64,000 bases of DNA from Ostrea edulis (lineage: Eukaryota): positions 80,662,001 to 80,726,000 of the forward strand of contig NC_079167.1 of the NCBI RefSeq assembly GCF_947568905.1, given 5' to 3'. The notes beneath the pieces were generated by a model. That model had not been told where the DNA came from, ran no database searches, and saw only the letters and a list, made by a program, of their open reading frames with translations. Both the position numbers and the translations under genes were made by a program. The stretch's first letter is position 1. Each line of letters starts with the position of its first letter. Shown piece by piece: positions 42,400 through 47,137 of the stretch.

Positions 42400-42670
42400 T
42401 GTGTTTGTGTGTGTAAGGATAGAACACTAGTCTCTCACTGCTGTTTAGTAATTATACCTTACAATATCTGTATTATAATTAATGAGACACTGTTAATCTT
42501 AGTATACTAATTACATGTACTTATCTATTGACACAGTAGTTGTGTGTTTGTGTGTGTACGGATAGAACATTAGTCTCTCGCTGCTGTTTAGTAATTATAT
42601 CGTACAATATCTGTATCATTATAATTAATGAGACATGATTTATCTTCGTATACTAATTACTTATTTGACT
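42400..42670. repeat. ~135-bp tandem duplication downstream of the TRIM gene
   Basis: GTGTTTGTGTGTGTA(A/C)GGATAGAACA(C/T)TAGTCTCTC..TATACTAATTAC occurs twice. Confidence 0.8.
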
Positions 42671-43366
42671 GTGTTACTGGTTATTTATCTCTATACAATC
42701 TTTTAAACACATGTGAGTCACGGAATACAATTTAATGAATGTATTAAAATTAGTTATTGTGAAGTACTTAGGAATTTCTCTTTGTCAGTAATTATTTTGG
42801 CCCAATTACTAATTTGACTGTGTTAGTATTTATTCATCTATCTATATAAAATCTTTTGAACACATGTTTATATAATCAATTAATTCAACGAAAATCAATT
42901 ATTGTGATGTACTAAGAAATTCTATTTAGTGTGTAGCCTTGAATTATAGTACATCCACTAGTGAGTACTTACAAGTAATTAATTGAATTGAATTCTATAG
43001 CCTTGAATTATAGTACATTTACTACTGAGTACAATGTACTTACATGTAGTATTACTTGTTTTTGTGTGATGAACAGCTAACAGAACAGTATTTTGGAAAT
43101 TATTGTATTTATTACATGTATTATATAACTGTGTATATATAAACACTATTTAGAGTACAATCTTACATTATTACTGAGTACTTACTTAGATTTATAGTAC
43201 TGTAACAGAGAGTGACCCCAAACATCCTTCATCACAGATCTTCAGATTCAAGGTCACAGTCTTCTGTTGACCATCAACAAGGTCACAACAATCCACAGTC
43301 CTACAAAATCAACACAGACAAAGTGTAATCATGTCAAACTGTATCGTCAAGAATTGTCTGTATTTG

Positions 43367-44081
43367 AAAAGGAGGTCCATGGGCTACATTGCTCACCTGA
43401 GTCACCTTGGTCCATATATAAAGATTTTCCCTATATTTTTGCATGTAAAATATTGGTCCCTATTGTTGCCCCAACCTACTCACGGGGTCCATGATTTTTA
43501 CAAACTTGAATCTGCACTATGTCAGGAAGCTTCTGTGTAAATGTAAACTTCTCTGGCCTAATTGTTCCTGAGAAGATTTTCTCGATATATTTGTATGTAT
43601 AACTTTGATCACCTATTGAGGTCCCATCCTTCCCCCAGGGGCATGATTTTAACAAACTTGAATCTTGCTCTATGCCAGGAACCTTTCATGTAAATTTATA
43701 CTATTCTGGCTCAGCAGTTCTTGTTGAGAAGATTTTTCCTAAATATTTGTATGTAAACTTTGATACCCTATTGTGGCCCTATCCTACCCTCGGGGGTCAT
43801 GATTTTTACAAACTTGAATTTCCATAATGTCAGAAAGCTTTCATGTAAATGTCAGCTCTTCTGGCCCAATGGTTCTTGAGAAGATTTTTAAATGACACCT
43901 CCCTATTATTACATTTTTGTGATGATATCCCCTCTGAAAAGGCCCTTCATTTCAATGTACTTGAAACCCAAGGATAGTTTTTGCCAAGTTTGGATGAAAT
44001 TGGCCCAGTGGTTCTACAGAAGAAGTTGAAAATGTAAAAAGTTGAAAGACAGACAGGTGGACAAGAGGTGATCAGAAAAGT

Positions 44082-44114
<33 letters not shown>
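43367..44114 (+). mobile_element. Helentron-type non-autonomous element with Cg170-like units
   Basis: Same 5' box (GAGG(C/T)CCATGGG..GCTCACCTGAG), satellite units and 3' box (TCAGCTCAGGTGAGCTAAAAA) as 11162-12199. Confidence 0.8.
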
Positions 44115-44151
44115 TTCCATTTACAGTGGAGTATATTTACTTGTTCATATA

Positions 44152-44299
44152 CAGTTAAACCTTGGTATCTCAAACATCGATATTTTGAATACCATGGATA
44201 TGTTCAAGTGAGTTAGAAGTCCTAGCTACATTTTCTTTCCGTAGTTTTACCTCAATATCTCAAACCTGATATCGAGTTCCAGATATTGAGATTCAACTG
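44152..44299. mobile_element. Tc1/mariner-type MITE
   Basis: TA|CAGTTAAACCTTGGTATCTC...GATATTGAGATTCAACTG|TA; homologous to 14179-14345. Confidence 0.75.
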
Positions 44300-47137
44300 T
44301 ATAGGTCAATGTAATAGGAAGGAATAAATGAGATTCGATTGTATAGGTAAATGTAATAGGAAGGACAAAATGACATTCGACTCTAAAGGTAAATGTAATA
44401 GGAAGGACAAAATGAGATTCGACTCTATAGGTAAATGTTATAGGAAGGACAAAGTGAGATTTGACTGTATAGGTAAATGTAATAGGAAGGACAAAATGAG
44501 ATTGGATTGTATAGGTAAATGTAATAGGAAGGACAAAATGACATTCGACTGTATAGGTAAATGTTATAGGAAAGACAAAATGATATTGTATAGGTAAATG
44601 TTATAGGAAGGACAAAATGAGATTGGATTATATAGGTAAATGTAAAAGGAAGGACAAAATGACATTCGACTCTATAGGTAAATGTAATAGGAAGGACAAA
44701 ATGAGATTGTATAGGTAAATGTAATAGGAAGGACAAAATTGCATTCGATTGTAGAGGTAAATGTAATAGGAAGGACAAAGTGAGATTTGACTGTATAGGT
44801 AAATGTAATACGAAGGACAAAATGAGATTGGATTGTATAGGTAAATGTAATAGGAAGGACAAAATGACATTCGACTCTATAGGTAAATGTTAAAGGAAGG
44901 ACAAAATGAGATTGACTGTATAGGTAAATGTAATAGGAAGGACAAAGTGAGATTTGGCTGTATAGGTAAATGTAATAGGAAGGACAAAGTGAGATTTGAC
45001 TGTATAGGTAAATGTAATAGGAAGGACAAAATGAGATTGTATAGGTAAATGTTATAGGAAGGACAAAATGAGATTGTATAGGTAAATGTAATGGGAAGGA
45101 CAAAGTGAGATTTGACTGTATAGGTAAATGTAATAGGAAGGACAAAATGAGATTGTATAGGTAAATGTTATAGGAAGGACAAAATGAGATTGTATAGGTA
45201 AATGTAATAGGAAGGACAAAATGAGATTGTATAGGTAAATGTTATAGGAAGGACAAAATGAGATTGTATAGGTAAATGTAATAGGAAGGACAAAATCACA
45301 TTCGATTGTATAGGTAAATGTAATAGGAAAGACAAAATGAGATTGTATAGGTAAATGTAATAGGAAGAACAAAATGAGATTTGACTGTATAGGTAAATGT
45401 AATAGGAAGGCCAAATCAGATTGTATAGGTAAATGTAATAGGAAGGACAAAATGAGATTGTATAGGTAAATGTAATAGGAAGGAATAAATGAGATTGTAT
45501 AGGTAAATGTAATAGGAAGGACAAAATGATATTTGACTGTATAGGTAAATGTAATAGGAAGGACAAAATGACTTTCGACTGTATAGGTAAATGTAATAGG
45601 AAGGACAAAATGACATTCGATTGTATAGGTAAATGTAATAGGAAGGACAAAATGAGATTTGACTGTATAGGTAAATGTAATATGAGGGACAAAATGATAT
45701 TCGACTGTATAGGTAAATCTAAAAGGAAGGACAAAATGAGACTGTATAGGTAAATGTAATAGGAAGGACAAAATGAGATTGTATAGGTAAATGTAATAGG
45801 AAGGACAAAATGAGATTTGACTGTATAGGTAAATGTAATAGGAAGGACAAAATGACATTCGATTGTATAGGTAAATGTAATAGGAAGGACAAAATGAGAT
45901 TTGACTGTATAGGTAAATGTAATATGAGGGACAAAATGATATTCGACTGTATAGGTAAATCTAAAAGGAAGGACAAAATGAGACTGTATAGGTAAATGTA
46001 ATAGGAAGGACAAAATGAGATTGTATAGGTAAATGTAATAGGAAGGACAAAATGAGATTTGACTGTATAGGTAAATGTAATAGGAGGGACAAAATGAGAT
46101 TGTACAGGTAAATATAATAGGAAGGAGAAAATGAGATTTGACTTTATAGGTAAATGTAATAGGAAGGACAAAATGAGATTTGACTGTATAGGTAAATGTA
46201 ATAGGAAGGACAAAATGAGATTGTATAGGTAAATGTAATAAGAAGGACAAAATGAGATTGTATAGGTAAATGTTATAGGAAGGACAAAATGAGATTGCAT
46301 AGGTAAATGTTATAGGAAGGACAAAATGAGATTGTATAGGTAAATGTAATAGGAACAACAAAATGAGATTGGATTGTATAGGTAAATGTAATAGGAAGGA
46401 CAAAATCACATTCGATTGTATAGGTAAATGTAATAGGAAGGACAAAATGAGATTTGACTGTAATAGGAAGGACAAAATGATATTCAAGTGTATAGGTAAA
46501 TGTAATAGGAAGGACAAAATGAGAATTGACTATAGGTAAATGTAATAGGAATGACATAAGAAGAATGGACTGTATAGATAAATGTAATAGGAAGGACAAG
46601 ATGAGATTTGACTGTATAGGTAAATGTAATAGGAGGGACAAAATGAGATTGTATAGGTAAATGTTATAGGAAGGACAAAATGAGATTGGATTGTATTGGT
46701 AAATGTAATAGGAAGGACAAAATGAGATTGTATAGGTAAATGTTATAGGAAGGACAAAATGAGATTGTATAGGTAAATGTTATAGGAAGGACAAAATGAG
46801 ATTGGATTGTATTGGTAAATGTAATAGGAAGGACAAAATGAGATTGTATAGGTAAATGTAATAGGAAGGACAAAATGAATAGGTAAATGTAATAGGAAGG
46901 ACAAAATGAGATTGTATAGGTAAATGTAATAGGAAGGACAAAATGAATAGGTAAATGTAATAGGAAGGACAAAATGAGATTTGACTGTATAGGTAAATGT
47001 AATAGGAAGGACAAAATGAGATTGTATAGGTAAATGTAATAGGAACGACAAAGTGAGATTGGACTGTATAGGTTAATATAATAGGAAGGATAAAATGAGA
47101 TTGTATAGGTAAATGTTATAGGAAGGACAAAATGAGA
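44300..47137. repeat. ~2.8-kb minisatellite of 42-bp and 37-bp monomers (remnants continue to ~47720)
   Basis: Monomer TATAGGTAAATGTAATAGGAAGGACAAAATGAGATT(CGACT)G; ~70 copies by length; explains all repetitive ORFs in this interval. Confidence 0.98.

What the first reader, a model, noticed from the sequence alone, without database searches (positions are those of the whole stretch)
44152..47137. A 2.8-kb minisatellite apparently born from a MITE terminus plus its flank
The array starts at the base after the MITE's right end. Its 42-bp monomer equals the TA target site plus 28 bp of flank plus GAGATTCGACTG, which matches the MITE's own last 12 bases (GAGATTCAACTG). Every full monomer therefore recreates a TIR-end/TA junction, and 37-bp monomers delete part of it. 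This looks like a snapshot of satellite genesis at a transposon end, possibly via abortive transposase cleavage and repair, and creates dozens of potential transposase-end sites.
Basis: partly seen in the sequence, partly recalled or inferred. Interest (0 to 1): 0.7.

Follow-up and report, generated by a model that had tools for sequence, protein, structure and literature searches.

The report
Minisatellite born across a MITE end
A 2.8-kb tandem repeat in an oyster genome grew from a 42-base piece spanning the last 13 bases of a small transposon and the 29 bases beside it; an older duplicate locus keeps the unrepeated state, and nothing shows that the transposon's enzyme was involved.

Summary
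A 147-bp TA-flanked MITE (44152-44298) is followed from 44299 to 47137 by 72 monomers. Most are 42 bp (38 spacings) or 37 bp (27 spacings).

- The 42-bp consensus is the MITE's last 13 bases, plus TA and a 5-bp spacer, plus 22 bp from the end of a SINE-like repeat.
- An older paralogue on contig C1 has the same flanks and the same MITE, but the 29-bp flank only once and running straight on. That is the unexpanded state.
- The MITE family's 3' consensus matches the monomer's 12-mer.

Three points need correcting.
- The array is not a fresh snapshot and not unique. It predates several segmental duplications: three paralogues on C3 carry 40, 18 and 19 monomers.
- It also predates two insertions of an abundant 257-bp repeat.
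- Nothing points to transposase. The founding breakpoints lie 13 bp inside and 29 bp outside the cleavage site, at a 3-bp AAT microhomology. Genome-wide, internal pieces of this MITE family sit in arrays about as often (5 loci) as terminal pieces (7 loci).

Monomers carry only half of the 24-bp TIR. The most likely mechanism is ordinary slippage followed by unequal exchange. It is a neat but modest example of a transposon-derived minisatellite.

The parts
43941..44119 (+). End of an abundant dispersed repeat to the left of the site. It is not part of the array.
   Evidence: 3131 candidate copies genome-wide cover query positions 10-183/188 of window 43932-44151. Only the paralogues A-D extend beyond that.
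44120..44149 (+). Low-copy spacer to the left of the MITE, shared only by the five paralogous loci.
   Evidence: the same left flank (..catttacagtggagtatatttacatgttcata) occurs at C4, at three places on C3, and on C1.
44150..44151 (.). Left TA target-site duplication.
   Evidence: The family shows TA/TA in 7 of 13 complete copies.
44152..44298 (+). Tc1/mariner-type MITE, 147 bp. It is a shortened copy of a family of about 175 bp.
   Evidence: 1028 candidate copies, most aligning over positions 1-115; about 175 bp, 24-bp imperfect TIR CAGTYRAACYTC..TATCTCAAAC, TA duplication.
44286..44298 (+). The last 13 bases of the MITE (TGAGATTCAACTG), which are the source of the MITE-derived part of every 42-bp monomer.
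44299..47137 (+). Minisatellite array of 72 units, 42 bp and 37 bp intermixed. It includes a local 242-bp higher-order duplication: 45624-45865 against 45866-46107, 97.5% identical.
47138..47394 (+). Insertion of an abundant 257-bp repeat ('R257'). It sits in a 37-type monomer junction and ends the array.
   Evidence: 5320 candidates, typically 93% identical over query positions 1-257, which begin exactly at 47138. Paralogue A has the same insertion.
47395..47444 (+). About 1.3 monomers, with a 37-type junction, trapped between the two R257 copies.
   Evidence: It shows that the array and its 37-bp variant existed before the insertions.
47445..47697 (-). Second R257 copy, inverted and more diverged (about 80% identity to the family). 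It is inserted at TATAGGTAAA^AATGTAATAGG.
   Evidence: It sits at the same position within a monomer in paralogues A, B and C.
47698..47719 (+). Last, ancestral copy of the flank part (AAATGTAATAGGAAGGACTAAA). It runs straight on into TTTATGGCT.. and so marks the original right boundary.
   Evidence: It is colinear with locus D (47697-48348 against D, 79%).
47698..47820 (-). SINE-like repeat, tRNA-like by eye. Its terminal 22 bp supply most of the 'flank' part of the monomer.
   Evidence: 409 candidates cover positions 8/9-116/133 of the flank, contiguous across the monomer's right breakpoint. ARAGORN and Rfam do not call it.

Best explanation
A Tc1/mariner-type MITE had inserted at a TA, 7 bp from the end of a SINE-like repeat. 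Later, in one lineage of this duplicated segment, a 42-bp stretch was duplicated in tandem. It runs from 13 bp inside the MITE's 3' end to 29 bp into the flank and is bounded on both sides by the trinucleotide AAT. The likely cause is replication slippage or template switching at that microhomology (inferred). Unequal exchange and further slippage then expanded the pair into an array. A 5-bp deletion produced the 37-bp variant, which spread. Two copies of a 257-bp repeat inserted into monomers. The whole segment was copied by segmental duplication to give four array-bearing loci, whose copy numbers have since drifted to 72, 40, 18 and 19. The array is a neutral, locus-specific VNTR. It needs no transposase and is not mobile. 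Shown: the composition of the monomer, the unexpanded paralogue, the paralogy, and the order of events. Inferred: the slippage mechanism and neutrality.
For: The MITE family consensus end matches the monomer 12-mer. Locus D (C1) has the same left flank (78%), the same shortened MITE (83%) and the same right flank (79%), but a single flank copy and no R257. Hundreds of SINE-like copies read straight through ..GGACAAAA(A)TTATGGC.., so the GGACAAAA|TGAGATT junction in the monomers is derived. Locus A is colinear with window 42648-48729 at 93-94% and has a 40-unit array with the same R257 / trapped monomer / inverted R257 architecture. Loci B and C have 18-19 units and both the 42-bp and 37-bp types. 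The monomer occurs nowhere else in the genome (10 first-look candidates, all at these loci). AAT lies at both breakpoints: MITE ..GATAAT|GAG in D and in the family consensus, flank ..CTAAAT|TT in the window and A. Terminal and internal pieces of the family sit in arrays at similar numbers of loci, 7 against 5, as expected if tandem duplication is independent of position. A second minisatellite, with a 39-bp unit, arose in the same flank in paralogue A, so the region slips without any MITE end. Haber and Louis's model of minisatellite origin, as summarised in PMC6947457, describes exactly this route.
Against: The microhomology is only 3 bp, whereas the classical model invokes 5-10 bp. No MITE-free empty site was found, so the MITE insertion itself is inferred from family structure and the TA duplication. 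The window and A arrays show no register-specific alignment (87-88% at every offset), so expansion before or after duplication cannot be apportioned. In B and C the array lies on the other side of the inverted R257 insertion, which requires extra unequal-exchange steps. The comparison of 7 terminal with 5 internal array loci rests on exact-match patterns, and those loci could not be fetched.
Confidence: 0.7

Rival explanations
1. The founding duplication was seeded by transposase. A nick or one-ended cut at the MITE's 3' end (abortive excision) was repaired by synthesis-dependent or polymerase-theta-type end joining, which copied the sequence across the break twice. The array then expanded as in the main explanation.
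For: The founding unit spans the TIR tip/TA cleavage site. At least 7 other loci carry short-period arrays that contain this family's terminal 12-mer plus TA. From general knowledge, repair of nicks and staggered breaks can produce tandem duplications that span the lesion.
Against: The breakpoints are 13 bp inside and 29 bp outside the cleavage site, at a microhomology. Internal MITE segments, which are not transposase cleavage sites, form arrays at 5 loci, about as often as terminal ones. A non-MITE 39-bp unit expanded in the same paralogue family. The MITE is still in place in all five paralogues. No cognate transposase was examined.
Confidence: 0.12
2. Structure-driven slippage: the MITE's inverted repeats and internal palindromes stall replication forks, which makes the whole element and its immediate flank prone to template switching. 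No transposase is involved.
For: Both terminal and internal pieces of this one family sit in arrays at a dozen loci, while the reversed control patterns give 4 and 0 hits. The internal 32-bp array unit contains the palindromes CCATGG and GATATC.
Against: The reversed-pattern control does not correct for the family's high copy number, so enrichment over other abundant repeats is unproven. No folding or fork-stalling evidence was gathered here.
Confidence: 0.12
3. The array is ancestral, and locus D is a collapsed array reduced to one unit by unequal exchange between the MITE end and the last monomer.
For: Such exchange is possible because every 42-mer repeats the MITE end. B and C seem to have lost the units between the MITE and the inverted R257 in this way.
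Against: D is the most diverged paralogue (78-83%) and also lacks both R257 insertions. Its flank reads exactly like the many SINE-like copies elsewhere. A collapse would have to be precise and to predate the insertions. Even if true, it does not change where the monomer came from.
Confidence: 0.04
4. The MITE plus array is a composite mobile element, a tandem-repeat-containing MITE, which spread by transposition.
For: Such elements are known in bivalves and frogs (PMC3879986; PMC12628747). MITE plus array occurs at four loci on two chromosomes.
Against: All array loci share at least 1.4 kb of left flank and the right flank, so they are paralogous segments and not new insertions. The array lies outside the right TIR, and no terminal TIR follows it.
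Confidence: 0.02

Closest known systems
Minisatellites born inside or beside transposable elements by slippage between short direct repeats (Haber and Louis 1998 model; Alu-, B1- and LTR-derived minisatellites, reviewed in PMC6947457)
   Same: A short unit bounded by a direct repeat is duplicated once and then expands by slippage and unequal exchange. The unit is TE sequence. The result is a locus-specific VNTR.
   Different: Here the unit is a chimera that spans a TE boundary: 13 bp of MITE end, TA, a 5-bp spacer and 22 bp of a second, SINE-like repeat. The direct repeat is only 3 bp. An unexpanded paralogue and three expanded ones survive in the same genome.
Tandem-repeat-containing MITEs (DTC84 of Donax trunculus, PMC3879986; pearl/CvA of oysters; miDNA4 and Xstir of Xenopus, summarised in PMC12628747)
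   Same: There is a physical association of a MITE with a short tandem array. The host is a bivalve. Microhomology is proposed to drive changes in copy number.
   Different: In those elements the repeats lie between the TIRs and travel with the element to many loci. Here the array is outside the TIR, includes flank DNA, and has spread only by segmental duplication.
Helentron- and Helitron-carried satDNA-like arrays of oysters (PMC7492417, PMC11136912)
   Same: These are short arrays scattered in oyster euchromatin and derived from transposons.
   Different: Those are central repeats of rolling-circle elements, present at hundreds to thousands of loci. This monomer has about 150 copies at four paralogous loci, which would be too few for the read-clustering surveys those papers used.

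Membership tests
Tc1/mariner-type (Stowaway-like) MITE | TA target-site duplication | tested here: met
   TA lies on both sides at 44150-51 and 44299-300. 7 of 13 complete family copies have TA/TA, and most others keep one TA.
Tc1/mariner-type (Stowaway-like) MITE | Terminal inverted repeats starting CAGT | tested here: met
   The family consensus left end CAGTTGAACTTCGGTATCTCAAAC against the reverse complement of the right end CAGTCAAACCTCATTATCTCAAAC gives 24 bp, imperfect.
Tc1/mariner-type (Stowaway-like) MITE | Short, non-coding, many dispersed copies | tested here: met
   About 175 bp, with 1028 first-look candidates on all large contigs.
Tc1/mariner-type (Stowaway-like) MITE | Termini shared with an autonomous transposase-encoding element | not tested
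   No autonomous partner was sought.
Minisatellite / VNTR | Head-to-tail units of 10-100 bp in an array of 0.5-30 kb | tested here: met
   72 units of 42 or 37 bp over 2839 bp.
Minisatellite / VNTR | Variable copy number | tested here: inconclusive
   The paralogues carry 72, 40, 18, 19 and 1 units. Allelic variation could not be read from short unitigs.
Tandem-repeat-containing MITE (DTC84 / pearl / miDNA4 type) | Repeats lie between the element's two TIRs | tested here: not met
   The array begins after the right TIR tip and ends in flank DNA with no closing TIR.
Tandem-repeat-containing MITE (DTC84 / pearl / miDNA4 type) | The composite is dispersed to loci with unrelated flanks | tested here: not met
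   All four array loci share both flanks. The monomer is absent elsewhere.
Satellite DNA (abundant or widely dispersed) | High copy number and many arrays | tested here: not met
   About 150 monomers in total at four paralogous loci.
Haber-Louis type origin (slippage between short flanking direct repeats) | A direct repeat bounds the founding unit in the unexpanded sequence | tested here: inconclusive
   AAT lies at both boundaries, 42 bp apart in the window/A version of the flank and 43 bp apart in D. This is shorter than the 5-10 bp of the model.
Haber-Louis type origin (slippage between short flanking direct repeats) | A single-copy progenitor state exists | tested here: met
   Locus D on C1 and the read-through SINE-like copies.

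The most novel reading that the evidence does not exclude
Ends of this MITE family are recurrent birthplaces of junction-spanning minisatellites, because transposase nicking or TIR hairpins provoke templated repair across the TIR/TA boundary. The seven other terminal arrays found genome-wide would then be independent instances of one transposon-end-specific process that seeds satellites.
Probability: 0.1. Interest if true: 0.65.

Novelty: new member of a known kind. Interest (0 to 1): 0.33.

Why it matters
How tandem repeats start is rarely observable, because the single-copy progenitor is usually gone. This genome keeps the unexpanded state (C1) alongside four expanded paralogues with 18 to 72 units. 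It also holds internal time markers: two dated repeat insertions, a derived 37-bp variant, and CpG decay of TCGAC to TTGAC or TCAAC. The birth and early life of one minisatellite can therefore be reconstructed step by step. The case also shows that a monomer can be a chimera of two different transposons plus their spacer. Repeat annotation pipelines would misread such a unit as 'MITE-derived' or as unknown. It does not reveal a new mechanism.

Tried and rejected
- I tried to fetch larger stretches of the paralogous loci. All paralogue work therefore rests on stitching the overlapping loci L002-L005, L034-L062 and others. The other array loci could not be read.
- A specific test for a MITE body upstream of the C2:106.2 Mb array found nothing. 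This is inconclusive, because it needed exact matches.
- An Rfam scan of 43800-48400 at E<=0.1 found nothing, and ARAGORN found nothing on the flank. The tRNA-like look of the flank and the hammerhead reading of R257 therefore remain by-eye only.
- Register-specific alignment of the window and A arrays gave no preferred offset.
- The extent of paralogy to the right of 48729 could not be read, because the search was swamped by other transposons.
- Coding potential was rejected. Minus-strand ORFs of up to 449 aa arise only because the reverse-complement monomer has no stop codon in any frame, and the 37-bp units break the frame.
- Assembly artefact was rejected. The junctions recur in unitigs from independent studies, and paralogue A has the same architecture.

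Full report
**What is there.** The window is G000:C4:80662001-80726000 of an 895-Mb genome. Public runs labelled as an oyster metagenome hold the stretch, so the host is an oyster.

At 44152-44298 lies a 147-bp element that starts CAGTTAAACC and ends GAGATTCAACTG, with TA on both sides. It belongs to an abundant family with 1028 first-look candidates. Complete family copies are about 175 bp. They are flanked by TA, have a 24-bp imperfect terminal inverted repeat, and end ..AAGATAATGAG(G/A)TTTGACTG. This is a Tc1/mariner-type MITE. The copy here is a shortened one.

A tandem array starts at the next base, 44299, and runs to 47137. A 32-base core matches 70 times in the window against none in shuffles. 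Anchoring on a 21-base core gives 72 units. Their spacings are 42 bp (38 times), 37 bp (27 times), 31 bp (twice), and 30, 36, 40 and 41 bp once each.

The 42-mer consensus is AAATGTAATAGGAAGGACAAAATGAGATTCGACTGTATAGGT. The 37-mers lack five bases of the MITE-like part. They are also more uniform than the 42-mers (95% against 90% pairwise identity), so they are the younger type.

**Where the monomer came from.** The MITE probe found four other full-length, closely related copies. Three are on C3 (95%, 92% and 92% identity) and one is on C1 (83%). All four share the left flank of the window copy. I stitched the overlapping loci already fetched into four paralogous stretches, A to D, and compared them with the window.

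| Locus | Position | Left flank identity | MITE identity | Array | Other features |
|---|---|---|---|---|---|
| A | C3:88.56 Mb | 94.3% (colinear with 42648-48729; 87-93% to the right of the array) | 94.6% | 40 units | same right-hand structure as the window |
| B and C | C3:88.93 and 88.80 Mb | 89.5% | 91.5% | 18 and 19 units | inserted repeat between the MITE and the array |
| D | C1:9.708 Mb | 78% | 83% | none | right flank 79%, no inserted repeats |

D reads ..GAGATTCAACTG|TATAGGTAAATGTAATAGGAAGGACAAAA|ATTATGGCT... So the flank occurs once and runs straight on.

The window has the same continuation at 47698-47726, after the inserted repeats: AAATGTAATAGGAAGGACTAAATTTATGGCT. From flank position 8 onward, the sequence is the end of a SINE-like repeat with 409 candidate copies. 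Those copies read straight through the point where the monomers switch to TGAGATT.

The monomer is therefore a chimera with three parts:
- the last 13 bases of the MITE;
- TA plus a 5-bp low-copy spacer;
- 22 bases of the SINE-like end.

The GGACAAAA|TGAGATT joint in the monomers is the derived state. The family consensus matches the 12-mer, and no array lacks the MITE.

**How it probably started.** The founding 42-bp segment begins 13 bp inside the MITE and ends 29 bp outside it. Both boundaries carry AAT: MITE ..GATAAT|GAG, flank ..CTAAAT|TT. This fits a single slipped or template-switched duplication at a microhomology, followed by expansion through unequal exchange. That is the classical route to a minisatellite as summarised in PMC6947457, although the direct repeat here is shorter than the 5-10 bp usually quoted.

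The MITE-derived part carries a CpG (TCGAC) that has decayed to TTGAC or TCAAC. This is seen in many units and in the paralogous MITE ends themselves.

**Order of events.** The array ends at 47137 because an abundant 257-bp repeat is inserted there. That repeat has 5320 candidates at 93% identity, and the matches begin exactly at 47138. About 1.3 monomers with a 37-type joint follow at 47395-47444. Next comes an older inverted copy of the same repeat (47445-47697), and then the ancestral flank.

Paralogue A has the identical arrangement. B and C have the inverted copy at the same position within a monomer, but there it is three tandem 351-bp units and sits in the first unit after the MITE.

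The likely sequence is therefore:
1. MITE insertion.
2. The split that gave D.
3. The founding 42-bp duplication and the 37-bp variant.
4. The repeat insertions.
5. The segmental duplications that gave B/C, and then A and the window.
6. Independent gain and loss of units.

Two results support the last step. The window and A arrays align equally well at every offset (87-88%). A 242-bp block in the window is duplicated at 97.5% identity.

The monomer occurs nowhere else in the genome. So this is an old, paralogue-restricted VNTR. It is neither a fresh event nor a dispersed satellite.

**Was transposase involved?** I could not test this directly, but two controls argue against needing it.
- An exact-match search for two copies of the family's terminal 12-mer plus TA, 34-64 bp apart, found arrays at seven other loci. 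Their periods include 23, 26, 39 and 58 bp. The same search with an internal 15-mer of the family found arrays at five loci, with periods of 32, 45 and 63 bp. Terminal pieces are thus not clearly favoured over internal ones.
- A 39-bp unit from the SINE-like flank (window 47788-47827), which has no MITE end, has expanded to 6-7 copies in paralogue A.

The founding breakpoints are also not at the cleavage site. Each unit holds only the outer 13 of the 24 TIR bases, and only 21-23 units keep (G)ACTG|TA. The idea of dozens of functional transposase ends is therefore doubtful. That last point is an inference; binding was not tested.

A role for break repair at the MITE end, or for fork stalling at the MITE's palindromes, remains possible. 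I give each about one chance in eight.

**Comparison with known systems.** Transposon-derived tandem repeats are well known, also in bivalves. Examples are tandem-repeat-containing MITEs such as DTC84 (PMC3879986), the Xenopus MITE models summarised in PMC12628747, and Helentron-borne arrays in oysters (PMC7492417, PMC11136912).

This case works like a TE-seeded minisatellite but is not a member of the tandem-repeat-containing MITE class. The array lies outside the TIR, includes flank DNA, and has never moved except by segmental duplication. I found no description of a junction-spanning chimeric monomer in the reviews I read. That was a limited search.

**Checks on reality.** Unitigs from four independent studies bridge the flank/MITE junction. 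Exact or near-exact unitigs from two of them (X1, X4) bridge the MITE/array junction, and a third (X11) does so with 4 differences and may come from paralogue A. Unitigs from three bridge the repeat/flank junction. None spans the array, so the count of 72 units rests on the assembly. The long minus-strand ORFs inside the array are artefacts of a stop-free monomer.

**Limits.**
The other array loci and the wider paralogous regions could not be read.
- Related species were not available.
A CUGAAGA...GAAA core is visible by eye, but Rfam gave no match.

**Verdict.** The timing, the uniqueness and the transposase mechanism are not supported. This is a clean, teachable example of minisatellite birth across a transposon boundary, of modest novelty.

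Noticed in passing
window 47138-47394 (+) and 47445-47697 (-); loci B and C (C3:88.93 and 88.80 Mb): An abundant 257-bp repeat (5320 candidates) sits as a tail-to-tail pair around a trapped monomer. Elsewhere, and in B and C, it occurs as tandem 351-bp units (257 bp plus a 94-bp spacer), for example at C7:24.855 Mb. A CUGAAGA..GACA-loop-UGUC..GAAA hammerhead-like core is visible by eye, but Rfam finds nothing at E<=0.1.
   Followed up: partly
window 47788-47827; locus A (C3:88560329-88560524); C3:90178941-90178980: A 39-bp piece of the SINE-like flank is single-copy in the window and in D, but tandemly repeated 6-7 times in paralogue A. It is also repeated in a further paralogue at C3:90.18 Mb. 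This is a second, independent minisatellite birth in the same duplicated segment.
   Followed up: partly
G000 C2:93706881; C2:106197521-106198055; C3:96367349-96367702; C4:43901637; C5:58043821; C5:79591528; C7:76759087-76759438: Other short-period arrays (23, 26, 34, 39, 48 and 58 bp) have units that contain this MITE family's terminal 12-mer plus TA. The 58-bp unit carries about 37 bp of the MITE 3' end. Whether each abuts a full MITE could not be checked.
   Followed up: partly
G000 C3:37130351-37131165; C3:58610824-58611158; C4:58206150-58206420; C1:10142105-10142497; C7:28341669-28342155: Arrays with periods of 32, 45 and 63 bp are built from an internal, palindrome-rich segment of the same MITE family (AATACCATGGATATG..GATATCTC). 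The family as a whole seems prone to forming arrays.
   Followed up: no
window 43421-43888: A 155-bp tandem repeat (3.1 copies, 76% matches) lies inside the retrotransposon-like sequence to the left of the MITE. It is present in all paralogues and again downstream of the array in B and C.
   Followed up: no
window 44425-47014, minus strand: ORFs of up to 449 aa run through the array. The reverse-complement monomer has no stop codon in any frame, so these are artefacts and not genes.
   Followed up: yes
G000 C3:88.31-90.18 Mb: Further partial paralogues of the right flank cluster on C3 (88315708, 88659093, 88684575 and 90178395; 81-92% identity). None shows a detected MITE or array. The segment belongs to a locally amplified duplication family.
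   Followed up: no
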